NCBI GenBank assembly: GCA_950097015.1 | Contig: CATNEN010000010.1 | Span: 558,001 to 622,000, forward strand | Direction of reading: 5' to 3' | DNA length: 64,000 nt | Source: Macrostomum hystrix | Lineage: Eukaryota > Animalia > Platyhelminthes | Part shown: piece after piece, positions 8,332 to 23,677 of the stretch | How positions within the stretch are numbered: position 1 is the first letter of the stretch | How the letters are laid out: the number at the start of each line of letters is the position of its first letter | The notes under the pieces: generated by a model | What the model was told of the DNA's origin: nothing | The model's database searches: none | What the model saw: only the letters and a program-made list of their open reading frames with translations | Translations under genes and position numbers: made by a program

Positions 8332-9476
8332 GTGGGCTCAGATCAGCTTAGTAAAATGTATCAGATGCGATATCAGAACCTAATCCTATTCTATTTAGAT
8401 CTGAACACAGTTATACTCAACAAATTTGCGCTATTTATCACGTTTTCTAGATCTTTATTTTATATTTTAAGTACTTTTCACGATAAAATGACGTCTATGG
8501 TCTCACAAAACTTTTCAGGAGTTTTACGCTTGTGCAATGAAAAGCACAAATTTTTTCAAGTGCTTTGAGGCTATACATCTACACCGAAAAATAAAAACGT
8601 CCATAAGAATGTTATTACATTATATATATTCATCCCATGGTTTATGTAGCACTTTATTTATTACTGTAATAGTCTTTGTGTAGATTAAAATTATGGCTAG
8701 AGACTCGCAAAAGCTATATTGAGCTCTTGCGCACACGCGAAACAGACATGAGGGGCAGTTGGCTGTTGTCACAGCTGAGACACAGCGCCTGCTAGTCAAG
8801 CATGACAAAGCAGTCAGTCAGCGTCACAGTTCGCCCTTGGCCTCGGCGCTTCCGCTACGTAGGCTGTTGCAGGAGGACCAGGGCCAAAGGAACTTGGTCG
8901 CGCGGCCATGACTTTGCACACTGCAGGCAGTGCCGAGGCAGCATTCGGCGATGTACGTGCGATACAAATTGTTAATACATTTATAGTTGTCTGACTTAGG
9001 AATCCTGAACTGAATTATACGCTTGCAAATAGGATACAGGTGCAAAAAAAACTTTTTTCGGCATCGCGCCAGAATTTAGGAGCTCGGTGCGGTAGTCTGA
9101 ATCCTTCGTCGTCTCGGCGCCGCTGTGAAAGCGGGCAACACACGCACCTGTATTCACGCTGCGTAATCGCGCTCCTTAGTGGGCAGGCTGCTATATACTT
9201 TTATTATATAACATAGCTGTCGATTTTGAATCTCACGCCAGTCTCACATTGCTATTTATTAGTTAAATTAATGGTTTAATTGAAGTTCATTGAAGTTTTA
9301 AGTATATTTAAGTTTGAGAATTCCTGGAAAAAGTTAGAATTATTCCAAGTTACGTAAAAATATATATGGCACGATTATAATTGAGGAAAATATGTATAGT
9401 TTTTAAACGGTTATATTCAGGTTATGCAGCATTTCCGATTTTTGTGCAAATTTGTGCAGACTTTTCTTTAATGTGG

Positions 9477-9934
9477 TGTGACGTTGTCTCTCTAATTTAA
9501 TGTAATTTTAATATGCTACTTCTAATTAAGTGCATTATTTTCGTTAGCTATAATTGTTAGAGATATTTCTTTGGTTTTACATTAATATTTATAATGGTTT
9601 TGTTTTAGTGTACTACATAGTCGTAGTTCGTATTCAAATGTGCTAATTAGGCCTTTCCAGGAAGGCTCCCAACCCACACCCCCCGTGCCTGGTTCTGGTT
9701 CTACGACTGAGTGCTGGCTATTATTTAAGTGTGGCTAATTTCAACTGTAGCCGTAACTACTTTCAAGTGAATCTTGATTCATCTAACATATCTCTAAGTC
9801 ATATAGCCAGCATTCACCGTTAAGCGATCTCGTTATTTGAAGACCCAATTTACTGCCGAATAATAATTTACCTTACTGCTATTCAAATAGACCGAACCGC
9901 TACGCCTATACATTGGGACCGAAACTTCGTCATA
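9477..9934 (+). repeat. 5' LTR
   Basis: TGTGACG...CGTCATA; only one substitution seen by eye against 20546-21003 (gctacttc vs gctatttc). Confidence 0.97.
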
Positions 9935-11511: not shown

Positions 11512-12070
11512 TCTATATATATAAAAGTGAAAACTCTGTCTGTCTGTCTGTCTGTCTGTGTGCAACCTTTTGTCTTTATAGACGCCGAAACCGCTCAACC
11601 AAATCGCACCAAACTTTGCACATACCTAAAACCACCTACGCTGAGTGCAATAGGCTACTCAAATTCCCGAAAAATCATTTCCTTCCTGCTCAAAAGTGCA
11701 AATAACTGCTCAAAAATCGTCAAAAAATCACTCAATTCGACATATCGTCGCCCCACTTTGTCAGATTTTCTCCAAATTTGATCCACTTACACTTTACATG
11801 TTTTCCAACAATGCTGTCAATTTTGAACATCTCTACTCAATCCAGAGCAAAGCTGCATCATCTCAAAGTGAGTCACTTTTTGTTTTCCGAGGACAGCCAC
11901 CCCAACTCCCCTCCGCCACTCTGCGGGCCAATTTTATTACAGCCACCCCCTCCCTTCCCCGGGCGCCGAAGCCCCAGACTGTACATTGTATTTCAAGCCG
12001 TGAATGTACACAGCCCAAACCCCTAGACTGTCTACTGGCCCCCAAGCAGCACTGAGACTGAGTGCGGTGA

Positions 12071-12772
12071 GTGCGGTGGCGTCCCAGTGCGCAGGGCTCT
12101 CCGGTCGATATTTCTCTCCAGCCAGCCTGGGATAGAAGAAAGAGAGAGGCTGGCGTTGACTGGCTGTCAGAGAGGGCAATTCTGCGTCCTAGAAATGATG
12201 CCGCCAACGAAATTAACTACCAACTGCTTCAGGAGTTGCCAGGTGCAGTTTTCACCTACAAGTCAATTGATACAACGTTGACTGATGACACCGCTGTGGA
12301 GTATCCTGTTGAGTTTCTGAACTCTCTAGATCCTCCTGGAACTCCATCGCACAACTTGCAGCTGAAAGTTGGGGCACCAATTATGCTCCTCCGCAACCTG
12401 AATGCGCCAAGGCTGTGTAACGGCACCAGACTGATAGTCAGGCGGCTCTTCCCACACGTGATTGAGGCCACGATAATGACTGGATCTGGCAGAGGAGAGT
12501 CTGTGTTCGTTCCCCGGATTCCAATTATCCCCACGGACCTGCCATTTCAGTTCAAGCGACTGCAGTTCCCTGTGAGAGTGTGCTTTGCGATGACTATTAA
12601 CAAGGCTCAGGGACAGTCGCTGAAGGTGGCTGGCATCAACCTGGAGACTCCTTGCTTCTCGCATGGGCAGCTTTATGTCGCCTGCTCCCGTGTTGGAACT
12701 CCAGCTGGCCTATTCATTTTCGCACCAAGGGGAAGAACGAAGAATGTGGTGTATCCCCAGGCCTTGAGGTGA
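12071..12772 (+). pseudogene. Helitron PIF1-like helicase, C-terminal fragment
   Basis: Motifs AILRPRN, LKVGAPIMLLRNL, RLCNGTRL, KRLQFPVRVCFAMTINKAQGQS, FSHGQLYVACSRV, TKNVVY; Rep domain and N-terminal helicase motifs absent. Confidence 0.93.
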
Positions 12773-12924
12773 CTCGCAAGCAATTAATAGAAAAGTAGTC
12801 ACGAATTGACCTTGACCTGTCTAACTCTAAACTCTGAAACAGTTTAATTTTGTTTCTTTGACATTGTTATTGTTATGCCATGGCTATTTTCCTTATGTAT
12901 ACGCGTGTACATGCATACTGTATA

Positions 12925-13184
12925 CAGAGGCAGATTTAGGGGGGGGTGGGCGGGGGGCAGTCGCCCCCCCCCCAAAATTTTAATCATGGGAATAAGATGC
13001 CCCCACCAGGGGCGCCAGTCGCAGCACTGGCGCCCCTTTTCGGCCGCTGGCGCCCCTTTTTCAGCCGCTGGCTCCCGTTTTTCAGCCGCTGGCGCCCTTT
13101 TTCGGCCGCTGGCACCCCCTCTGTGATTCTCATGGCGCTCCCCTGACAGACCGCCCCAAAACAAAATTCCTGGATCTGCCACTG
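12925..13184. mobile_element. hAT-type MITE, 260 bp, inside the Helitron
   Basis: TIRs CAGAGGCAGATTTAGG / reverse complement CAGTGGCAGATCCAGG; perfect 8-bp TSD ACTGTATA (12917-12924, 13185-13192); internal ~21-bp repeats. Confidence 0.9.
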
Positions 13185-13684
13185 ACTGTATAGAGGAGTG
13201 GCTAATAGACATGTTTCTAAAGAAGTAATCAAGAGGGGGCTGTTTGGACAAACTTTTCACTTATTTTTTACTTAAAACGCCCTTAAACAAACTCTTCACT
13301 TTTCATTAATGCAGTAAATAAATAAATGGTGACCTTCACTATAAAGTTATGTGGTGCCGGTGTCTCTGGCCTTGTGGTTTTGTTAGGCCTTCCTCACCCA
13401 ACGCCGTCTTGGCTGCCCGGTGCCCGGTGCCGCCATCTGATTGGCTGGGCGCGGGCCTTGTGTGCCTATCCTACCCCAGCCCTGCGTGGCTTTGCCCTCA
13501 CGCCAATCAGCTCTGCGTAGCTTTGCCCGTCCACCCGTCCAGCGCGTACAACCCAACCCCCCCAGCGCGCTGTAGGCTTTGTTTGTGCTCCGCCCATGTC
13601 TGCCCCCTTGTCAGCCCTTAAGGTATCGTTTTCTGCCCGGGCCAAGGCTACCTCTCTCTCCCCTTGCGAACTTTAAAAGATCGT

Positions 13685-13728
13685 GCCGTAAAGACGGTCT
13701 CTTACTGCGAAGGCTCAATTTATTGCAT
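13685..13728 (+). ncRNA. Flatworm spliced-leader exon-like sequence (non-canonical copy)
   Basis: GCCGTAAAGACGGTCTCTTACTGCGAAGGCTCAATTTATTGCAT: 5' stem CCGT/ACGG, TTACT and ATTT.TTGCAT as in flatworm SLs; near-identical to the Macrostomum SL as recalled. Lacks the terminal G of AUG and the adjacent GT donor. Confidence 0.75.
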
Positions 13729-14117
13729 AGCGAAGTGATTATTGAATAGTGATTCCGAGTGCATGGTTTATTAAAGTGCAAAAATTGCCGACAAATACAT
13801 TCAGCGTCATCCTGCCATCCTATCGTGCGTCCCGACCGGTAAGCACTGTATTTGTGTCTGTCCTTTCGGGGTGCCAGGTCCGCACGGAGTACTGTAATAA
13901 TCTTAGAAGTACTGTGTGAGCGTCCTAACGCCACCAGTCCCTGACTGCAACAGAGCGTCCTAACGCCTGGTTCAGTGATCGATAATATTTTACTTAATAG
14001 GGCTGTCGGCCGGGGATCTCAAACCGACCACTGTCACTACAGTTAATACAGAGACGTGAATTGCTTACTGCTTTGCTTTAAATTTCTGCCCCAAAAACAA
14101 CGGGCAAAAAAAGCTAG

Positions 14118-17100
14118 TACTATATAGAACTGACCTCAGCCCAACAGCTGTCATCGGAGAGTATCCAGGAGTATTTTGACCGCCTCATAGGCCTAGCAAA
14201 TGCCGCGGACATGAGCCGCTCTGAGTACGAGCCCCTAGTAAGGACGCGGTTTTGCTATGGCTTGGCTGACAAAACTATTGCCGAAAAACTTATCAATATG
14301 CTGCATGAAGCACCCAGGGCTTCACTGGAGAGACTCCTAGCTAGGGCTCGAGACACAGATCAAACTAGGCAGCTGCTCAAACTGACTGAGCAACCCAAGG
14401 TTAGAAGTGTTGAAGCAGACGAGATCCGAGCCCTGAAGGCGAGAATAGCAGAACTGGAGAAGAAACAGTCAGGGCCACAACAAAGCACACAGAAACCTAC
14501 TAATAGCAACAGTGGTGGCCATAGGCACAACTTTCATTCTCAGAAGTCCCCCCAGGACTACTCTAGTCATGCCCGAATGAGCGGCGCCCTACCTAAATGC
14601 TTCAGGTGTAGTGAGACTGGCCACCTCATTGCCGAATGCCCCTATCCTAGAGAGCCAGGTACTGGTGCGCCACCCTCGAAGTTCAGGACCCCGCAACCCT
14701 TTAGGGAACCAAAAAGTTTTAAGCCAAATGCGAGTTCGAGGCCACCCAGAGAGAAGGGGGTAGTGACTCATTGGAAAGACTCTTACGGGTTCATACAGTC
14801 CTCTCAGATAGGCGACTCTGTTTTTGCGCACCTGTCTCAGTTGGTCCAGCCCCTGTTGGACCTGGCCTTAAGCCACCAGCTAGTGGGTACCAGCGTGACA
14901 TTCAGCCGTGTCGCCGACGCTGGCAAGTCTAGAGACAAAGCTATTAGTGTGACAGCTACGTCGACGGACCCTAAGTGTGCTGAAGTGTCTTCAGACCTAC
15001 CCAGTTACAAGGCAGGATTCTATGTTCAGGTTGAGATTGGCGAGACCAAGACTGTTGCCCTTCTAGATCCCGGTGCCAATGCCTCTCTGATTTGCCCGAA
15101 GATGCGAGACAAGCTCCTAGAAGCTGATCCAATCAATAATGTCTTCACCCCTGCGCGCACCCAGCGCACAGCTACTGGTTTCAATGGGGCTAGTTCGCAA
15201 ATACTAGGCAAGCTCCAGTGCGAAGTGAGTTTAGGCAAATTAAAACAGCAGCACATATTCTTAGTGATTGAAGGCCAGTTATCCGAGATCCTGCTAGGGT
15301 TGGACTTCTGTGGTAATTTCCAAATCGTCATGGACATGGCCTGTGACCGTGTGACCTGCGCTGGAGAGTACGTCCCAATTTTTCGCGGCACCAATGCGAT
15401 CTGTAGCGTGAATCGCGTTGTGGCCGCTTGCGATACAGTCCTGCCACCCCGCTCAGAAACGCTGATCCCAGCTAGGGCTATAGACGCTGAGAGCAGTTCC
15501 TATGGCGTTGTTAGTGCCAGATTATTCGACCCCGACCCGTCTATCATAGTCGCCAATTCATTGGACCAGGTCAGCCCCACTAGTCACGTGTTAGTCAGAG
15601 TCCTAAACAGCGGCGAAGATGAGGTGAGGATTGCCAAGGGCGAGGAGGTAGCGTCTTTCAAGAAGCTAGGAGCTGATGAGAGCGTAGTGAGTACCAGACT
15701 TAGTGAGAGTGATTTCAGCATTGACAACGAGAGCGCGCTTAATGATAAGCTGTGCAAGCTGCCCTACCCAGATCCAGGGACAACCAAGTGGCTCTTAGAC
15801 CAATTTCACCTGCAGGAGCGTAACCTGACCCAGGAGCAGCTGGATACGACAGTAAAAATGCTGAACTATTTTCTTAGCCAGATCTCGAAATCGGAAGCAG
15901 GCATCGGTAGAACCCCTCTGCATGAACTGTCAATCGAGTTAAAGGACCCGAAGTGTCGCCCGATTTCTCAGCCATCGAGGCGAACAACCCCAGCGCAAAA
16001 GGAATTTCTGGATAAGTACATCGCCCAGCTCCTAAACCAGGGAGTTGTTGAAGAGTGCGACTCCGAGTGGGCCTCACCCATTGTGCTTGTGAAAAAGAAG
16101 GACGGTACATGGCGCCTTTGCGTAGATTACCGTGCGCTTAACAAGCACATAAAGCCGTGCTCTTTCCCGCTGCCCTTGATAGACGAATCTTTCGATAGCT
16201 TAGCGGGATCCGCCGTCTTTAGTAGTTTAGATCTGACGAGCGCCTACTGGCAGGTAGGGATCCGGGAAGCTGACCGAGACCTCACCGCGTTCTCATGTCC
16301 CCAGGGCACCTTTCGTTGGACCGTAGTCCCCTATGGGATCAAGACCGCGCCTGCAAGTTTCGCCAGGCTGATGCACCGCGTGTTTCGCCCTCTTTTGCTC
16401 AGGGTTAGCCTAATTTACCTAGACGATGTCATCATCAAGGCCAGAAACAACGACGAGATGATTTCCCATCTGGCGCTAGTTTTCTGGCAGCTTAGAAAAG
16501 CGAATCTGAAAATCAGACCCTCGAAGTGTGAGCTCTTCAAGGACAAACTGAAGTTTCTGGGATTCATAGTCTCCTCAAAAGGGATAGAGGCCGATCCGAC
16601 CAAAACTGAGGCCGTTCAACAGTGGTGTACACCTAGGGATAAGAAGCAGCTTCTCTCCTTCCTGGGATTTGCCAATTACTACAGAAAGTTTGTCCCTAGG
16701 TTCTCCATCATAGCCACGCCTCTGTATGCCCTAGCCAAGAGCTCTGAGAAATTTGTTTGGCGCCAAGTGCACGAGGCCGCTTTCCAAGAACTAAAGTCCA
16801 GCCTATGTAATCCACCAGTGCTGAGATACCCAGACCTGAGTCCCACAGCGGGCACCTTTGTTCTAGACTGCGACAGCTCCCTTGACGGTGTGGGAGCAGT
16901 CCTTTCCCAACTAGATGGGAACGACGTAGAACAAGTGATTGCCTACGCTTCTAAAAAATTCACCAGCGCGCAGCGAAACTATTGCGCCACCTTGAGGGAG
17001 CTCCTAGGTCTGGTTCTTATGTTAGAGCAGTTCAGAACTTACTTACTTGACCGGGAGTTCCTAGTGCGAACAGATGCGATTGCTCTGAAGTGGTTACACT

Positions 17101-19853
17101 CAAAAAAACACGCAACCGGAATGCTCGCCCAATGGTTGGTCACACTAGAGCCTTACACCTTCAAGGTAGACCAGACTCCACTGGAGAGAATAGCGGAGTA
17201 CGATTTTAAAATCTCCCACAGAGCCGGGGAATCCCACGTTAATGCGGATGTTTTGAGTCGCAACCCGAAGTTCAGAGCAGACCATTTCGACTGCCCAACC
17301 TGTAGCCTGATCCCAGAATTTATATCCAAGTTCCAGAAGGGAAAAAAACCAGCGCCATCGGATGTTAGTGAGGTCAAAATCAGCCGTATGTGTGTCAGTA
17401 CTCAGACTCTAGTCACAACTGGCTGTCAGACCACCGAGCTGATATTCGACTCAGCGATTCAGCTTCAAAATGAGCCGGTTACAGACTTAGCAGTTCAGAC
17501 TGACCTCCAACGGGTCCCTGAGATCCCTGAGCCTAATCAAGCTAGCAAGCGCCCAGTCATCCCAACCTCGTCTGCAGGTACTCAGGTAGACACCAAACCT
17601 AAACCGGAAACACCGCCATCAGCCGCAGCACATGCTGTGCAAGTCCAGGTCTCGGATAGGTCCACGATCGCAGACGAAGTTCTAGACCCAGGCAGTGATA
17701 ACGAAGATGAGGCGGGGGCTGAACAGAGAGAAAGAGAATGGGCCCGTAGTGCTCAGGATTCAAACATTGATCTTGTTTTCCTGAGAGATGCTGTAGCTGG
17801 AAAGGTAGAGAGGTTGTCTAAGCAGGAGCTCCAAGGTTGCAGTCGTGAGCTCAGAGCCTTATGGGCTATGTTTGACGAACTGTCTGTTGAGGACGATCTG
17901 CTGCTTCGGAACAAGCCAGCCAAGAAAAGGAAGCCCGCTGCCAAGCTTACGGTCATCCCTGAGTCTGCGAATGTAGATGAGCTAGTGACCAACTACCACA
18001 GAGCCGTTAATCACTCGGGGATAAACAAGACTTTAGGAGTGGTAAAAAAGAACTTTCAAATCTCGAACCTAGAAACTATAGTCAAGGGAGTCGTAGCTAG
18101 CTGTGAGATTTGCGCTAGGACTAAGAAATGCAAGCGAAAGAACAAAGCTCCGATGCAGCCAACCCTAGCCGGGTACCCGAACCAGGTCGTGCATGTAGAC
18201 CATTGCGGACCGTTCCCTGAACAGGAAGGCTACCGGTATCTGCTTGTAATGATTGACAGATTCACCGGATTTGTGGAAATTGTCCCTGTGAAAGACGTAA
18301 CTGCCGAGACAACCGCGGCAGCAATCCTGACAGAGTGGATTGTTCGCTACGGTGCTATGGAGCAAATGGTCTCGGACAATGGCACAGCATTCATAAATAA
18401 CATTGTTGCAGAGCTGACCCGCTTGCTAGAGATCGATACCGTTAGAATCACTGCTCGCCGCCCCCAGGCCAACGGGAAGGTGGAACGCAACATCCAGACT
18501 ATTAAGAGTCAAATTCGAGCAGTCTGTGCTGAGAGGCATGTGACTTGGCCCTTTGCCGCTAGGTGTGTAGGAATGAGCATCCGCTCTCTAGAATCCGAAT
18601 CGACAGGCATGACACCTGCTAAGCTTTTTCTGGGCCGTGAATTTCAAATGCCCCTAGACCTGATGTACAACCCACCAAGGCAAGATTGCTATGACCCGGA
18701 CAGTTACGCGCACCGACTCCACCGAACTCTTGTCGAAACCTCTGCCACCGCACGGGCTGTTAGGAAGAAGGCACAGGCTAGGCAGAAGCGTTACTATGAC
18801 AGATCGGTTTATAAGTCAAGCTACGAGGTTGGAGAGCTAGTGTGGGTTCTAAACCCCGACCACAAAGGCCTCGACCCAGCTGTTTGGTTTGGTCCGTACA
18901 AGGTTATTCAGAAGGTCTCTGAGAGAAACTATAGGTTGATTCCAGAGTTTTCGCGAGAGAATCCGTTCAGAGTACCGAATCCTAGTCACAACATCTATAA
19001 CGTAGACCGGATGAAGAGGTGCATCCGCCAGCCAAACTATCAGGATGTGGTTGATAGATTTAGATTAGACACCGTAGCAAGGATGCCACGCTCATCTAAG
19101 CTAGGACAAGGAGATCTGGATTCCAGCTCCAGACAGCTGAGCTTTAGTTCTGACTCGACTTCCGAACCAGACTTGGTCACTGTCCCACCTGCGGGTCAGA
19201 AGAGCCGCTCTTTTCCGAGAAGCCAATCGTCATCAATCACACAGCCAGTCGAACAGCCAATCACACAGCCAGTTCAACAGCCAATCACACAGCCAGTTCA
19301 ACAGCCAATCACACAGACAGTTCAACAGCCAATCACACAGCCAGTCGAACAGCCAATCACACAGCCAGTTCAACAGCCAATCACACAGCCAGTTCAACAG
19401 CCAATCACACAGACAGTTCAACAGCCAATCACACAGCCAGTTCAACAGCCAATCACACAGCCAGTTCAACAGCCAATCACACAGACAGTTCAACAGCCAA
19501 TCAAAACACTGCCAGTGGAACAGCCAAATGCTCAACCAGTCACTAAACCAGAGTCACCACCCGAGGTGCAACCTGAACAAGCACCACAAGCAGTAAACAT
19601 TGTCAATAATGAACAGGTGCCAGACATCGGTGCTGAAGTTGAAGTCACAGCAGAGCCAAATCCAGATCCTCAGGCAACAGCAATACCAAATCTGCCACCA
19701 GAACCACAACCACAAATAGAACACGAACACGATCAGACAGACCAGGCACAGAGACCAGCTTGCACTGTTACGAGGTCCGGCCGGCAAGTAAGGCCGCCGG
19801 TCAGATTCCTTTCCACGCTGGTCAATCTGTTCAGGAGAGGTAGCGAGAGCTAA
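14118..19853 (+). CDS. Gag C-terminus + Pol, single open frame (CCHC knuckle, cold-shock domain, protease, dUTPase-like, RT, RNase H, integrase)
   Basis: Knuckle CFRCSETGHLIAEC 14598-14639; CSD ~14748-14957; LLDPGA 15060-15077; YLDD 16416; RNase H DCDSS / RELLG / TDA; integrase HHCC, VDHCGP, SDNG, NGKVE; GPY motif; terminal TRSGR. No stop in 1911 codons. Confidence 0.96.
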   Translation, partial: YYIELTSAQQLSSESIQEYFDRLIGLANAADMSRSEYEPLVRTRFCYGLADKTIAEKLINMLHEAPRASLERLLARARDTDQTRQLLKLTEQPKVRSVEADEIRALKARIAELEKKQSGPQQSTQKPTNSNSGGHRHNFHSQKSPQDYSSHARMSGALPKCFRCSETGHLIAECPYPREPGTGAPPSKFRTPQPFREPKSFKPNASSRPPREKGVVTHWKDSYGFIQSSQIGDSVFAHLSQLVQPLLDLALSHQLVGTSVTFSRVADAGKSRDKAISVTATSTDPKCAEVSSDLPSYKAGFYVQVEIGETKTVALLDPGANASLICPKMRDKLLEADPINNVFTPARTQRTATGFNGASSQILGKLQCEVSLGKLKQQHIFLVIEGQLSEILLGLDFCGNFQIVMDMACDRVTCAGEYVPIFRGTNAICSVNRVVAACDTVLPPRSETLIPARAIDAESSSYGVVSARLFDPDPSIIVANSLDQVSPTSHVLVRVLNSGEDEVRIAKGEEVASFKKLGADESVVSTRLSESDFSIDNESALNDKLCKLPYPDPGTTKWLLDQFHLQERNLTQEQLDTTVKMLNYFLSQISKSEAGIGRTPLHELSIELKDPKCRPISQPSRRTTPAQKEFLDKYIAQLLNQGVVEECDSEWASPIVLVKKKDGTWRLCVDYRALNKHIKPCSFPLPLIDESFDSLAGSAVFSSLDLTSAYWQVGIREADRDLTAFSCPQGTFRWTVVPYGIKTAPASFARLMHRVFRPLLLRVSLIYLDDVIIKARNNDEMISHLALVFWQLRKANLKIRPSKCELFKDKLKFLGFIVSSKGIEADPTKTEAVQQWCTPRDKKQLLSFLGFANYYRKFVPRFSIIATPLYALAKSSEKFVWRQVHEAAFQELKSSLCNPPVLRYPDLSPTAGTFVLDCDSSLDGVGAVLSQLDGNDVEQVIAYASKKFTSAQRNYCATLRELLGLVLMLEQFRTYLLDREFLVRTDAIALKWLHSKKHATGMLAQWLVTLEPYTFKVDQTPLERIAEYDFKISHRAGESHVNADVLSRNPKFRADHFDCPTCSLIPEFISKFQKGKKPAPSDVSEVKISRMCVSTQTLVTTGCQTTELIFDSAIQLQNEPVTDLAVQTDLQRVPEIPEPNQASKRPVIPTSSAGTQVDTKPKPETPPSAAAHAVQVQVSDRSTIADEVLDPGSDNEDEAGAEQREREWARSAQDSNIDLVFLRDAVAGKVERLSKQELQGCSRELRALWAMFDELSVEDDLLLRNKPAKKRKPAAKLTVIPESANVDELVTNYHRAVNHSGINKTLGVVKKNFQISNLETIVKGVVASCEICARTKKCKRKNKAPMQPTLAGYPNQVVHVDHCGPFPEQEGYRYLLVMIDRFTGFVEIVPVKDVTAETTAAAILTEWIVRYGAMEQMVSDNGTAFINNIVAELTRLLEIDTVRITARRPQANGKVERNIQTIKSQIRAVCAERHVTWPFAARCVGMSIRSLESESTGMTPAKLFLGREFQMPLDLMYNPPRQDCYDPDSYAHRLHRTLVETSATARAVRKKAQARQKRYYDRSVYKSSYEVGELVWVLNPDHKGLDPAVWFGPYKVIQKVSERNYRLIPEFSRENPFRVPNPSHNIYNVDRMKRCIRQPNYQDVVDRFRLDTVARMPRSSKLGQGDLDSSSRQLSFSSDSTSEPDLVTVPPAGQKSRSFPRSQSSSITQPVEQPITQPVQQPITQPVQQPITQTVQQPITQPVEQPITQPVQQPITQPVQQPITQTVQQPITQPVQQPITQPVQQPITQTVQQPIKTLPVEQPNAQPVTKPESPPEVQPEQAPQAVNIVNNEQVPDIGAEVEVTAEPNPDPQATAIPNLPPEPQPQIEHEHDQTDQAQRPACTVTRSGRQVRPPVRFLSTLVNLFRRGSES
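19235..19503 (+). repeat. Coding 24-bp tandem repeat, 11 units (ITQPVQQP), in integrase tail
   Basis: Unit ATCACACAGCCAGTTCAACAGCCA with a recurring pattern of variants. Confidence 0.93.
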
Positions 19854-20530: not shown

Positions 20531-20545
20531 TGAGAGGGAGGCGAG
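20531..20545 (+). promoter_or_regulatory. Polypurine tract
   Basis: TGAGAGGGAGGCGAG immediately before the 3' LTR. Confidence 0.85.
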
Positions 20546-21003
20546 TGTGACGTTGTCTCTCTAATTTAATGTAATTTTAATATGCTATTTCTAATTAAGT
20601 GCATTATTTTCGTTAGCTATAATTGTTAGAGATATTTCTTTGGTTTTACATTAATATTTATAATGGTTTTGTTTTAGTGTACTACATAGTCGTAGTTCGT
20701 ATTCAAATGTGCTAATTAGGCCTTTCCAGGAAGGCTCCCAACCCACACCCCCCGTGCCTGGTTCTGGTTCTACGACTGAGTGCTGGCTATTATTTAAGTG
20801 TGGCTAATTTCAACTGTAGCCGTAACTACTTTCAAGTGAATCTTGATTCATCTAACATATCTCTAAGTCATATAGCCAGCATTCACCGTTAAGCGATCTC
20901 GTTATTTGAAGACCCAATTTACTGCCGAATAATAATTTACCTTACTGCTATTCAAATAGACCGAACCGCTACGCCTATACATTGGGACCGAAACTTCGTC
21001 ATA
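20546..21003 (+). repeat. 3' LTR
   Basis: 458-bp direct repeat of 9477-9934. Confidence 0.97.
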
Positions 21004-21475
21004 GTGGTGGCAGTTGTTTTGTCTGCCGCCAGTTTGTCTGCTCAGCAGACAAAATTTAAAATCAGTTTATCTGCCATCCAATAGTGGGTGAATTGGTGTT
21101 GGAGCAAAAAGCTAGTGATGAAAATGAAACCAGCTCCTCTGCCAACCAAAGTCCAAAATAGCATTCATAATTCCAGTGAATTTATGTTTAATTTGTTAAC
21201 TTGATTTGATCAACACCAAAACTTCTGACAACCTGGCACAACATATATATATTAGGCAGTTCCAAAGATCTTAAAAAACAATGATTGATAGGCCCCCCTT
21301 TTGCTGGTATCGTATCATTGATTAATTGTATATTGTATCATACATATCATTGCTGGTTGTATTTTGAATAATGATATATATCAAATGGACTTCCTGCCCA
21401 GGATAGACTATGTATGTCTAGACCAAACAATAAAATATCACTGACCAATTCAATGTCACAATTTCATTGTAGATA

Positions 21476-22238
21476 TCAAGGACCACTGTAGTATAACAGG
21501 ACAGGAAACTCAAAGATCATGTAAATTTTTAGAAGGCCGATTTCCTGGAAAAATACACTGCGGAGATAGGAAAAAGTCATTTTTCAGCACATAATCAACA
21601 ATTGCTTTTGATCTGGAGCAAGTACAAATCTGTTTATCTTAGTACAGCATGCCCAACATTAAGCTCCATTGTTTTTATATAGCTTTGTTTATAAAAGTCT
21701 TATTTTCATATGTAACTTCATATCATATCATATTTTCATACTAATAGCCAAAAAAACTTACTATAAGTATATCAGTAGCAACTATATAGCTATAAGGTAC
21801 AACAAATTTCAAAATGATTTAAATGCAACCAAGTAAGTTAATTAATTTTTTTGGCTGTTAGTTTTGCCAAACTATTTAGCTAATATGTTAATTCAAACAA
21901 TTTAGGCCAAATTGAGAATATTTAGCTATCATATTTTGAGCTATTAAATGTGCTAGTCTATAGTCTATATAGATTCAAGACACTATTATATTATATAAAT
22001 ATATGAAAATAAGACTTTTATAAACAAAGCTATATAAAAACAATGGAGCTTAATGTTGGGCATGCTGTACTAAGATAAACGGATTTTTACTTGCTCCAGA
22101 TCAAAAACTATAGTTGATTATGTGCTGAAAAAATGACTTTTTCCAATCTCCGCAGTGTATTTTTTCCAGGAAATCGGCCTTCTAAAAATTTACATGATCT
22201 TTGAGTTTCCCGTCCTGTTATACTACAGTGGTCCTTGG
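21476..22238. mobile_element. Non-autonomous DNA element with ~235-bp terminal inverted repeats
   Basis: 21477-21711 is the near-perfect reverse complement of 22001-22237 (end CAAGGACCACTGTAGTATAAC); TA on both flanks (21474-75, 22239-40); AT-rich ~290-bp spacer, no ORF. Confidence 0.85.
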
Positions 22239-23677
22239 TAGAGTCCTTGGCACCTCTATCCCTGACTAAACAAAGGCTCTGTCTCTGATTTTCCTCTGTT
22301 CTCAGAGGTAGGGGGCCTAATTCACATTCTCCTATAAATTAGGTGGTATGTTGCCACAAATGTATGGCATTGCAGCCTAAGTATCATAAGTCATCTTTGT
22401 AAAATGTAGGCTGATCTTTATGTTCACTTGCTTTAAAGCTGATCATACATTTGCAGGTTGGCACAATCAGACTTGTGGGCTTCAAGTCATCTAGCCATCT
22501 AGAGTAGACTTAGTGCACAGAATCAAAGTCAGAAAAATAAACAATATAGCTAGAGTTGAGTCATTGATTTGCACCTCCCATTAAAATTTCTCCAAGCTGT
22601 CATGGCTTTATCAGCAGTAGAAATATTTTAATGCTAGATCAGCTCACAAATTAACATTTTCATATTGTACTGTTGTATTGTGTATTTTAATAATGAGGAT
22701 AGCAAAAAGTTTAGCTGCCACTACATGTTAAACTACTGATTTCTTAGCATGTTTTGTACTTTAACATTCTAAATATATAATGAAGTTAAATTGTTAGAGA
22801 CAAAAAAGTTTAACAAATGGTTCTACTGTATAGCTAAGCCTAAATTAAACTTAGTGCTAAAAAGTAAGACACTTTCTTACGGTATGAAGTAAGCTTAAGC
22901 TATTCTTAATATTTTTATGCTACCTTTTAGGTATCACACCAAATGCTTAAATTTCAATGCTAAGTAGCTAAATCTTTATGAAACTTAAAAATATGAAACT
23001 AATATATTTTATTGCTTTGGCTATTTATGCATAACAGTAATCTACAAAAAGAATCACATCATTATTTGGGTTAGAAAATTAAGTACATTTTCCAGTGTAA
23101 GTGGGATCCTTATAAGGTTTTCAGGGGAATTTTTTTGGACATATTTCATCCATAGTGAAAAACTTTTGTAGTCTCACAGCAGAAAACAAAAGAATTTTCT
23201 TAATGGTAACTAGAAAATGTAGAGGTGACAGGAAAGCTAGCAAAGTACATAAAGAACTTAACAGAGATTGCAAGTCTGCAGCTGCCCTAAAAATAGTAAA
23301 GAAACATGTATTTTTAATATCCCAAACAATAGCAAATATGGCTAGATGTGGACCAAGCTTGTTTCTCTACATTAATTTTTTACCATTTATGCATTACCAA
23401 TATGATTAACTTAGATCCATCCGATTACAGTTCTTTTTATATAACCTTACTATTGATATATTGGTATAATATTTAACTTAGTCAAATAAATATCATGTTT
23501 AATGTTTGCCAAATATACATTAAAAAATCTGCACTTTTAAAGTGTGCACATAATAATAAACCTATCTACTAATGTATTCTAATATTTTTTAACAGCTTAC
23601 AACCCAAAATGTTTATTTTTGCACTTCAGAATTCGCCCAAAAATTAGTGAATTGATAAATTGTGCAACAGAGCAGAC

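What the first reader, a model, noticed from the sequence alone, without database searches (positions are those of the whole stretch)
13685..13728. Spliced-leader sequence captured inside a Helitron
Seen: a 44-nt sequence with flatworm SL architecture (CCGT/ACGG stem, TTACT, ATTTATTGCAT), ~400 bp from the Helitron 3' end. It resembles the Schistosoma SL and, from memory, differs from the Macrostomum SL at about one internal base. It lacks the final G, the adjacent GT donor and an obvious Sm site, so it is not a normal SL RNA gene. Inference: a rolling-circle element has picked up an SL gene fragment (possibly with its promoter, 13330-13680) or an SL-capped cDNA end. It could then spread ready-made leaders or promoters. 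I know of SL-associated retroelements but not of SL-carrying Helitrons; novelty unverified.
Basis: partly seen in the sequence, partly recalled or inferred. Interest (0 to 1): 0.78.

Follow-up and report, generated by a model that had tools for sequence, protein, structure and literature searches.

The report
Spliced-leader relic in a solo LTR
The 44-base block is a real copy of the flatworm's spliced leader, but the Helitron did not capture it: it belongs to a lone retrotransposon LTR that landed inside the Helitron, and it is most likely a scar of a trans-spliced retrotransposon RNA, a kind of relic already noted briefly in other flatworms.

Summary
Window 13685-13728 matches positions 1-44 of the host's 45-nt spliced-leader (SL) exon at 43 of 44 bases, with 0 matches expected by chance. 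The assembly statistics equal Macrostomum hystrix.

- **What is shared with SL RNA genes:** only the exon, not the promoter, the GT donor or the Sm part.
- **Where the block sits:** at positions 336-379 of a 692-bp solo LTR (13350-14041, TG..CA, 4-bp duplication GTTA). A sister Helitron copy shows the empty site.
- **The LTR family:** Ty3/gypsy, with five full-length copies, LTR pairs 99.1-100% identical and a tRNA-Lys-type primer-binding site (PBS). Every LTR carries the SL, including older subfamilies about 80% alike.
- **The Helitron:** it is real (11512-14117; TC...CTAG, hairpin, A^T insertion, empty sites in paralogues). Only 2 copies carry the LTR; at least 40 scored 3' ends lack it.
- **Genome-wide:** 192 SL-like hits against 0 in the control. 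About 18 are SL genes. The sampled rest lie in several LTR families (gypsy, BEL/Pao, TRIM-like). Where the 5' end is kept they start at SL base 1, and they end at the splice donor, 14-313 nt before the LTR end.

Best reading: retrotransposon RNAs were trans-spliced and then reverse-transcribed, which fixed the SL at the U3/R border. SL relics in flatworm retroelements were noted in two papers, and this scan found the same scar elsewhere in this genome. Moderate-to-low interest.

The parts
13685..13728 (+). DNA copy of host SL exon positions 1-44 (43/44 identical; mismatch at 13713). It is followed by a 1-nt A insertion at 13729 that displaces the exon's last G to 13730.
13350..14041 (+). Solo LTR (692 bp, TG...CA) of a Ty3/gypsy family ('family 1, subfamily A'). 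The SL occupies LTR positions 336-379.
13346..13349 (.). Left copy of the 4-bp target-site duplication GTTA. The right copy is at 14042-14045.
   Evidence: empty site TATAAAGTTAATACAG at about L033:6312
14042..14045 (.). Right copy of the target-site duplication GTTA.
13350..13684 (+). Putative U3 of the LTR (inferred). It carries a conserved GCGAACTTTAAAAG motif just upstream of the SL and is unrelated to the SL-gene promoter.
   Evidence: the U3 assignment is inference
13770..13775 (+). ATTAAA, a possible polyadenylation signal 41 nt after the SL (inferred R end). Subfamily C has AATAAA 3-9 nt after the SL.
   Evidence: function inferred
13833..13844 (+). CGACCG|GTAAGC, a 5'-splice-site-like motif kept in all 14 other subfamily A copies checked (and in the window), 6 of 7 subfamily B copies and 6 of 9 subfamily C copies.
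   Evidence: function inferred
11512..14117 (+). Non-autonomous Helitron: 5' TC, 3' CTAG, inserted between host A (11511) and T (14118) with no target duplication. It hosts the solo LTR.
   Evidence: five paralogous host copies show the empty site GATAAATACTATATAG
14087..14106 (+). Helitron 3' subterminal hairpin (TGCCC...GGGCA), ending 11 nt before the terminal CTAG.
   Evidence: DNA fold -7.4 kcal/mol, z = -2.1
12071..12772 (+). Helitron helicase remnant (ORF with a Pif1 2B domain).
   Evidence: PF21530, E = 2e-19; PIF1 pieces in the sister copy L033
9476..21003 (+). Outer Ty3/gypsy element whose gag region is split by the Helitron. Its LTRs are at 9476-9934 and 20545-21003 (99.8% identical), and its gag-pol ORF is at 14211-19853.

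Best explanation
The 44-nt block is a DNA-encoded relic of the host spliced leader, carried by a solo LTR of a Ty3/gypsy retrotransposon. That LTR happens to be nested in the 3' tail of a small Helitron, and the Helitron is itself nested in another gypsy element.

**Shown.**
- Every LTR of this family has the SL exon at the same place, including the ones in five full-length, recently inserted elements and in two older subfamilies.
- The similarity to real SL RNA genes starts at the first base of the SL RNA and stops at the splice donor.
- Several unrelated LTR families in the same genome carry the same block, 14 to 313 nt upstream of the LTR end and the tRNA-Lys-type primer-binding site (PBS).

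**Inferred.**
- An ancestral element RNA was SL trans-spliced at an acceptor in its short 5' leader.
- Minus-strand strong-stop DNA, primed at the PBS, ran to the capped SL end.
- A rare illegitimate (microhomology) first-strand transfer then fixed U3-SL-(rest of R)-U5 in both LTRs. The outron and its acceptor were removed in the process.
- Since then the SL has been inherited as ordinary LTR sequence, probably as the 5' end of R. It carries lineage-specific mutations, so it is not renewed by trans-splicing at each cycle.

In the window, the element was reduced to a solo LTR by LTR-LTR recombination. The Helitron copy that carried it was then copied once more, to contig C14.
For: **Match to the SL.** The match is exact in place and unique, with 0 expected by chance. 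Host SL genes sit in about 11.6-kb tandem arrays and share only 13684-13728 with the window. Flank identity to the gene is 25-35%, against 95.5% for the exon.

**Solo LTR.** It has TG..CA ends, a GTTA duplication and an empty site in L033.

**Full-length elements of the same family.**
- LTR pairs are 99.1-100% identical, with 4-bp duplications, the PBS TGGCGCCCGAACGGGGAC and a polypurine tract.
- They encode a gag with a CCHC zinc knuckle and a pol in the order PR-RT-RH-INT. Five gag copies are 99-100% identical and have open frames.

**The SL is old in the family and inherited.**
- It is kept in subfamilies B (complete ...GCATG|CGAAG) and C.
- It is more conserved than its 60-nt flanks: 80% against 59% and 34% between A and C.
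- The shared substitutions and the extra A in all subfamily A copies show descent through DNA.

**The downstream sequence is the element's own.** The 102 nt after the SL occur only in LTR copies, with no host parent gene.

**Other families.**
- There are 192 SL-like hits against 0 for the control.
- Family 2 is BEL/Pao, with the SL 40-48 nt from the LTR end and PBS.
- Family 3 is TRIM-like, with the SL 14 nt from the LTR end and PBS.
- The copies that keep the SL 5' end start at GCCGT, and those that keep the last base end at GCATG.

**Literature.** The same reading was offered for parasitic flatworms (PMC5832876; PMC12582326). SL1 trans-splicing of a gypsy RNA (Cer1) is documented (PMC3315495).
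Against: - No RNA data were available, so the transcription start, the R boundaries and past trans-splicing of this element are all inferred.
- A strong-stop cDNA that ends in an SL complement has no partner at the RNA's 3' end. The capture step therefore needs a rare illegitimate strand transfer, which I could not document: no SL-less sister LTR with an acceptor at the junction was found. The closest gag relatives are only 49% identical, and no SL-like block turned up within the 2.7 kb fetched upstream of their gag; whether those stretches contain the 5' LTRs was not checked.
- The TATA-like TTTAAAAG lies only 7-14 nt upstream of the SL. Transcription may therefore start inside the SL rather than at its first base.
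- So many independent families carrying an SL may mean more than rare accidents, either selection or a regular mechanism.
Confidence: 0.8

Rival explanations
1. The Helitron captured a fragment of an SL RNA gene at the DNA level, possibly with its promoter, as Helitrons capture host gene pieces.
For: The block does lie inside a bona fide Helitron. Helitrons are known from established knowledge to capture host gene fragments.
Against: - The block sits in a 692-bp insertion that has its own TG..CA ends and a 4-bp duplication, and the tandem sister Helitron shows the empty site.
- The same 692 bp form the LTRs of complete gypsy elements elsewhere.
- No SL-gene flank is shared: identity outside the exon is 25-35%.
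- At least 40 other Helitron 3' ends lack the insertion.
Confidence: 0.02
2. The LTR family gained the SL by transduction: recombination during reverse transcription with a co-packaged host trans-spliced mRNA, or with the SL RNA itself. Under this reading the element's own RNA was never trans-spliced.
For: The block has exact exon boundaries, as any trans-spliced mRNA 5' end would. Template switching onto co-packaged RNAs is an established retroviral mechanism.
Against: - The 102 nt after the SL are found only in LTR copies, and no host gene matches them.
- In families 2 and 3 the SL is only 14-48 nt from the LTR end and the PBS, which leaves little room for foreign mRNA sequence.
- The SL RNA itself is unlikely as the donor, because none of its intron part is present.
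Confidence: 0.1
3. The SL in the LTR is kept because it is useful, not as a neutral scar. It might restore terminal redundancy (R) to RNAs that the host trans-splices, give LTR transcripts a host-like leader for translation or for escape from silencing, or, together with the conserved GTAAGC motif, form a mobile promoter + leader + donor module.
For: - The SL is more conserved than its flanks across subfamilies.
- At least four or five separate LTR families, spanning Ty3/gypsy and BEL/Pao, carry it.
- A donor-like motif downstream is conserved.
- The SL's ATG is lost in subfamilies A and C.
- Solo-LTR donors splice onto trans-splice acceptors in Echinococcus (PMC4558846).
Against: - The 44-nt sample is too short for a real test of selection.
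- Only subfamily A has an AG at the SL/leader junction, so regular replacement by trans-splicing is unlikely.
- Lineage-specific mutations persist in the SL.
- An LTR-encoded SL would carry an m7G cap rather than a trimethylguanosine (TMG) cap.
- There are no expression data.
Confidence: 0.15

Closest known systems
SL sequences embedded in flatworm retrotransposons (S. mansoni, PMC5832876; 24 parasitic flatworm species, 597 discarded loci mostly in LTR and LINE elements, PMC12582326)
   Same: Genome-encoded leader sequences lie inside LTR and LINE elements and lack the donor and Sm features. Both papers attribute them to integration of retroelements whose transcripts had been trans-spliced.
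   Different: - Those reports are a few sentences long, describe mostly partial leaders and do not place the SL within the LTR.
- Here the host is a free-living macrostomid.
- The full exon is present from base 1 to the donor, and it is mapped to the putative U3/R border 14-313 nt before the LTR end.
- It is kept through diverged subfamilies and is present in elements with identical LTR pairs.
Relict spliced leaders in dinoflagellate retroposed genes (from my own knowledge: Slamovits and Keeling 2008)
   Same: A DNA-encoded SL serves as a scar of reverse transcription of a trans-spliced RNA.
   Different: In dinoflagellates the carriers are host mRNA retrocopies, often re-spliced to give tandem relics. 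Here the carrier is the retrotransposon's own LTR, so the relic is copied at every transposition.
SLACS / CZAR / CRE1 site-specific retroposons of trypanosomatid SL RNA genes (from my own knowledge)
   Same: A link between retroelements and the SL.
   Different: Those non-LTR elements insert into SL RNA genes. Here the LTR elements carry a copy of the SL exon and are dispersed; the SL gene arrays themselves were not examined beyond the SL and U1 genes.
Helitron gene capture
   Same: Foreign sequence lies inside a Helitron and was copied along with it (contigs C10 and C14).
   Different: The foreign piece is an ordinary nested transposon insertion with a target duplication and an empty site, not a capture by the Helitron.
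Echinococcus ta-TRIM solo LTRs (PMC4558846) and C. elegans Cer1 (PMC3315495)
   Same: Both show an interplay between LTR elements and SL trans-splicing. LTR-initiated RNAs use trans-splice acceptor sites, and a Cer1 subgenomic RNA is SL1 trans-spliced.
   Different: Neither has the SL encoded in the LTR DNA.

Membership tests
SL RNA gene | SL exon sequence | tested here: met
   43 of 44 bases identical to exon positions 1-44; the final G is displaced by a 1-nt insertion.
SL RNA gene | GT(AAG) splice donor directly after the exon | tested here: not met
   The window reads GCAT-A-GCGAAG, whereas real genes read GCATG|GTAAG.
SL RNA gene | Sm-type site and 3' hairpins downstream; own upstream promoter shared with other gene copies | tested here: not met
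   The 60-nt flanks are 25-35% identical to the gene, which is the random level. Rfam gave no meaningful match on L005; the one hit there was a sub-threshold match on the opposite strand outside the LTR.
SL RNA gene | Location in the tandem SL gene arrays | tested here: not met
   The real genes lie in about 11.6-kb arrays on contigs C15, C17 and C42, next to a U1 snRNA gene. The window copy is dispersed on C10.
Solo LTR of a Ty3/gypsy LTR retrotransposon | TG...CA termini, a short target-site duplication and an empty site | tested here: met
   13350 TGTGG...CTACA 14041, GTTA on both sides, and the empty site TATAAAGTTAATACAG in L033. Six other solo copies have 4-bp duplications.
Solo LTR of a Ty3/gypsy LTR retrotransposon | The same sequence flanks complete elements that have a PBS, a polypurine tract, gag and pol in the order PR-RT-RH-INT | tested here: met
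   L031 and L032 have LTR pairs, the PBS TGGCGCCCGAACGGGGAC and the polypurine tract AGGAGGGGAGGA. Pfam finds zf-CCHC, an aspartic protease, RVT_1, RNase H and rve.
Helitron | 5' TC, 3' CTRR, subterminal 3' hairpin, insertion between A and T without a duplication | tested here: met
   The junctions read GATAAA|TCTATATA...GGGCAAAAAAAGCTAG|TACTATA. Five paralogous host copies read GATAAATACTATATAG, and the hairpin folds.
Helitron | Rep/helicase protein (autonomous copies) | tested here: inconclusive
   Only helicase pieces were found: Pif1_2B in the window and PIF1 in L033. No Rep (HUH) domain was looked for beyond these ORFs, and the window copy is non-autonomous.
Processed retrocopy of a trans-spliced host mRNA | A parent host gene matching the sequence after the SL, and a poly(A) tail | tested here: not met
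   The 102 nt after the SL hit only LTR copies, 26 of 26, and no poly(A) tract is present.

The most novel reading that the evidence does not exclude
SL-bearing LTRs are an adaptation rather than a scar. Host trans-splicing would otherwise cut off the 5' R of the retrotransposon RNA and block strand transfer. Elements that fixed the SL at the start of R, and so lost the acceptor, escape this. They may also gain a host-like leader and, with the conserved GTAAGC, a mobile promoter + leader + donor module. Solo LTRs, including the one carried by this Helitron, could then plug that module into nearby genes.
Probability: 0.15. Interest if true: 0.7.

Novelty: new member of a known kind. Interest (0 to 1): 0.33.

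Why it matters
This finding corrects a tempting reading, that a Helitron captures and spreads spliced leaders, into an ordinary nested-transposon story. It also gives a clean, well-anchored example of how SL trans-splicing leaves heritable scars in LTR retrotransposons.

In this genome about nine in ten SL-like copies are not SL genes, and those sampled lie in transposable elements. That matters in practice for SL-gene annotation and for SL-read mapping in Macrostomum. The consistent position of the relic, just upstream of U5 and the PBS, in several unrelated families suggests that retroelement genomic RNAs are regular trans-splicing substrates. It also makes a question testable: does trans-splicing hinder or help retrotransposition?

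Tried and rejected
- **SL-gene fragment with promoter.** Rejected, because only the exon aligns.
- **Helitron capture.** Rejected on the target duplication, the empty site and the full-length LTR elements.
- **Host mRNA 5'-UTR transduction.** The 102 nt after the SL gave only LTR hits.
- **SL-less close relatives that might show the ancestral acceptor.** The nearest gag relatives are 49% identical, and the 2.7 kb fetched upstream of their gag holds no SL-like block. This was uninformative about the ancestral state, and I did not check that those stretches contain the 5' LTRs.
- **Renewal of the SL by trans-splicing at each cycle.** Rejected for subfamily A, because all its copies share non-host substitutions and an extra A. 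Only subfamily A has an AG at the junction.
- **Rfam scan of the locus and of a real SL gene.** There is no SL family match. It found only U1 next to the SL gene and a sub-threshold chance hit.
- **One script timed out** and was rerun in a lighter form.
- **Not done: the large protein search and searches in other Macrostomum species.** I left these out because they are costly and no claim here rests on them.
- **Not done: joining the two halves of the split gag.** I built no joined or consensus sequence of any retroelement.

Full report
**1. The observation.**

The 44-mer is present exactly at 13685-13728 (+). It is unique in the window at up to 3 mismatches, and none of 100 shuffles gave a match.

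The window is G000:C10:558001-622000 of a 220,453,370-bp, 42-contig assembly. These are the published statistics of the Macrostomum hystrix assembly (PMC10468722).

The published M. lignano 35-nt SL (PMC8629364) is identical to the SL of this genome's own SL RNA genes. Those genes sit in tandem arrays of about 11.6-kb period on contigs C15, C17 and C42. In L016 the gene reads ...TCTTT|GCCGTAAAGACGGTCTCTTACTGCGAAGACTCAATTTATTGCATG|GTAAGACACC..., followed by an ATTTTTAG Sm-like site and a terminal hairpin.

Against this 45-nt exon the window block has one substitution, A>G at 13713. It then has one extra A at 13729, before the G that would have ended the exon. Subfamily B copies read GCATG|CGAAG where the window reads GCAT-A-GCGAAG.

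**2. What is shared with SL genes.**

BLAST of 12001-15500 against 30 SL-bearing loci shows that the true SL genes share only 13684-13728 with the window. In a MAFFT alignment the exon columns are 95.5% identical to the gene. The 60 nt upstream are 27.8% identical and the 60 nt downstream are 35.5% identical, which is the random level.

No SL-gene promoter and no SL-RNA intron part is present. The similarity begins at the first base of the SL RNA and ends at the splice donor. That is the signature of a spliced RNA product, not of a piece of gene DNA.

**3. The block belongs to an LTR.**

Window 13350-14041 (692 bp, TGTGG...CTACA) recurs at 97-100% identity at about 21 places. In L031 (C8) and L032 (C1) two such copies, 99.1% and 99.7% identical, flank 6.5 kb of internal sequence. 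Directly after the 5' copy comes AA-TGGCGCCCGAACGGGGAC. From memory, this differs by one base from the classic tRNA-Lys3 primer-binding site. Before the 3' copy lies the polypurine tract AGGAGGGGAGGA, and 4-bp duplications (GAAT, TTAG) flank the elements.

The internal ORFs are a gag with a CCHC zinc knuckle and a pol with an aspartic protease, RVT_1, RNase H and integrase, in the Ty3/gypsy order. Five gag copies are 99-100% identical and have open frames. Two further LTR pairs are 100% identical. The family has therefore moved recently.

In the window the LTR is alone, flanked by GTTA (13346-13349 and 14042-14045). A neighbouring Helitron copy in L033 reads ...CACTATAAAGTTAATACAGAG... without the LTR, which is the empty site. 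Six other solo LTRs have their own 4-bp duplications. The SL occupies LTR positions 336-379.

**4. The Helitron is real but is only the landing site.**

The segment 11512-14117 starts TCTATATATA and ends ...TGCCCCAAAAACAACGGGCAAAAAAAGCTAG. It has a subterminal hairpin and lies between host A (11511) and T (14118). Five paralogous copies of the surrounding gypsy element read GATAAATACTATATAG uninterrupted. This is a precise A^T insertion with no duplication.

The Helitron holds a Pif1 2B-domain ORF at 12071-12772. A sister copy in L033 holds PIF1 helicase pieces.

A second Helitron copy on C14 (L033:6388-9014, 99.2% identical) carries the same solo LTR in different flanks. The Helitron was therefore copied once after the LTR landed. 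A 208-bp probe spanning the insertion site found 40 scored 3' ends out of 500 candidates. All were 98-100% identical and continuous across the site. The LTR is thus a one-off passenger in 2 copies.

The Helitron in turn splits the gag region of an outer Ty3/gypsy element (LTRs 9476-9934 and 20545-21003, 99.8% identical; gag-pol ORF 14211-19853).

**5. The SL is an old, inherited part of this LTR family.**

| Subfamily | LTR identity to the window | Sequence at the SL end |
|---|---|---|
| A (window and about 20 others) | 97-100% | ...TTGCAT-A-GCGAAG (exon's last G displaced) |
| B (L036-L042) | about 81-91% | complete exon ...TTGCATG, then CGAAGTG |
| C (L043-L053) | about 79-81% | SL, then ACAAATAAAC; the next ~90 nt differ; similarity resumes at CATCCTG...CGACCGGTAAGC |

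Between subfamilies the SL columns are more alike than the 60-nt flanks. For A against C the figures are 80% for the SL, 59% upstream and 34% downstream. For A against B they are 91%, 78% and 72%. This is a mild hint of constraint on a short stretch.

All subfamily A copies share non-host bases: G at exon position 29, the extra A, and in most copies G in place of T at exon position 22. The block is therefore copied as DNA and is not renewed from the host SL at each cycle.

The 102 nt after the SL occur only in LTR copies, 26 of 26 hits. They are the element's own leader, not a host mRNA.

Downstream features are:
- ATTAAA 41 nt after the SL in subfamily A.
- AATAAA 3-9 nt after the SL in subfamily C.
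- A conserved CGACCG|GTAAGC 5'-splice-site-like motif in nearly all copies.

**6. The same scar in other families.**

The SL 34-mer has 192 hits at up to 3 mismatches. The reversed control has 0. About 18 hits are SL genes or a truncated gene copy with the GTAAG donor.

| Family | Type and loci | LTR | SL position |
|---|---|---|---|
| 2 | BEL/Pao (Peptidase_A17 + RVT_1); L067, L088, L080, L021 | 245-390 bp, TG..CA, PBS TGGCGC(A/C)CGAACG | 40-48 nt before the LTR end |
| 3 | TRIM-like, about 1.8 kb; L086, L089, with L002, L078 and L085 related | PBS TGGCGCCCGAACGGGGAC | 14 nt before the LTR end |

Further variant pairs 3.6-12 kb apart look like more LTR families. I infer this from the spacing only.

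In the families that keep the 5' end, the block starts at GCCGT, whatever precedes it. Where the last base is kept it ends GCATG. A few copies are 5'-truncated (L082, L083).

**7. The mechanism.**

Shown: the exon-exact boundaries, the position just upstream of U5 and the PBS in several unrelated LTR families, and inheritance as DNA.

Inferred: element RNAs were trans-spliced at an acceptor in their short 5' leader. Minus-strand strong-stop DNA, primed at the PBS, copied the rest of the leader and the SL up to the cap. A rare illegitimate first-strand transfer then joined this to U3. Both LTRs of the progeny became U3-SL-leader-U5, and the acceptor, which lies in the discarded outron, was lost. 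From then on the SL is part of R, or straddles the U3/R border.

The weak point is the strand transfer. An SL-tailed strong-stop DNA has no complement at the RNA's 3' end, so the event must be rare. I found no SL-less sister LTR to show the junction. The TTTAAAAG motif lies only 7-14 nt upstream of the SL, so transcription may start inside the SL.

Whether the SL is now useful is open. Possibilities are restored terminal redundancy, a host-like leader, or a leader + donor module. Only subfamily A has an AG at the SL/leader junction, which argues against routine replacement by trans-splicing.

**8. Comparison with what is known.**

Boroni et al. 2018 found SL exons merged to transposable elements in S. 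mansoni. They suggested 'trans-spliced retro-transcribed elements' (PMC5832876). A 2025 survey of parasitic flatworms discarded 597 SL-like loci, mostly in LTR and LINE elements, and gave the same explanation (PMC12582326). Cer1 of C. elegans shows SL1 trans-splicing of a gypsy RNA. Echinococcus ta-TRIM solo LTRs splice onto trans-splice acceptors.

I found no description for Macrostomum, nor of the placement within the LTR.

This scan has already reported the same scar on other pieces of this genome (s1-306094, s1-291356, s1-258409). My results agree with those notes and were obtained independently on this window.

**9. Verdict.**

It was not captured by the Helitron, it carries no SL promoter, and it is absent from almost all Helitron copies.

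It is a new member of a known kind, with useful anatomical detail. I rate the interest at about 0.33. The adaptive reading, at probability about 0.15, would deserve about 0.7 if it were true.

Noticed in passing
L016:1036-1198 (G000:C17, about 290 bp upstream of the SL RNA gene at L016:1491-1600): A full-length U1 snRNA gene (Rfam RF00003, 151.7 bits) lies just upstream of an SL RNA gene of the ~11.6-kb arrays, so the U1 and SL genes are linked, at least in this unit.
   Followed up: partly
window 14211-19853, about residues 182-249 of the ORF: The outer gypsy element's gag-pol has a sub-threshold cold-shock-domain hit (PF00313, E = 1e-4) between the zinc knuckle and the protease. This scan has already reported it (s1-273989).
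   Followed up: no
window 19186-19551: A tandem repeat with a 12/24-bp period lies inside the 3' part of the gag-pol ORF. It encodes a QPITQPV-type repeat after the integrase.
   Followed up: no
window 13833-13844, and the same motif in LTR copies L036-L066: CGACCG|GTAAGC, a consensus-like 5' splice site, is kept 40-118 nt downstream of the SL in nearly all LTR copies of subfamilies A, B and C. It may be the element's major splice donor. An unnamed 211-aa ORF follows pol in L031 (7168-7803).
   Followed up: partly
window 13027-13118: A short G+C-rich tandem repeat of about 21 bp (GGCGCCCCTTTTTCAGCCGCT-like) lies inside the Helitron, next to a poly-G/poly-C palindrome at 12930-12975.
   Followed up: no
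window 21474-21711 and 22001-22240: An inverted repeat with arms of about 238 bp (96% identical) lies just downstream of the outer element's 3' LTR. It may be a foldback or a DNA transposon with terminal inverted repeats.
   Followed up: no
L033:3976-9014 (G000:C14): Two Helitron copies lie head to tail, ...GCTAG|TCTATATA..., with nothing between them. This fits tandem formation by rolling-circle read-through. They share about 640 bp at the 5' end and about 125 bp at the 3' end, but their interiors differ.
   Followed up: partly
G000:C8:3484827-3508340: Two full-length SL-bearing gypsy copies lie 8.5 kb apart with the same flanks (GGATGAAT...), embedded in a GGATTGGGGGCGGATGAATATA-type satellite. 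This is probably a segmental or tandem duplication, not two separate insertions.
   Followed up: no
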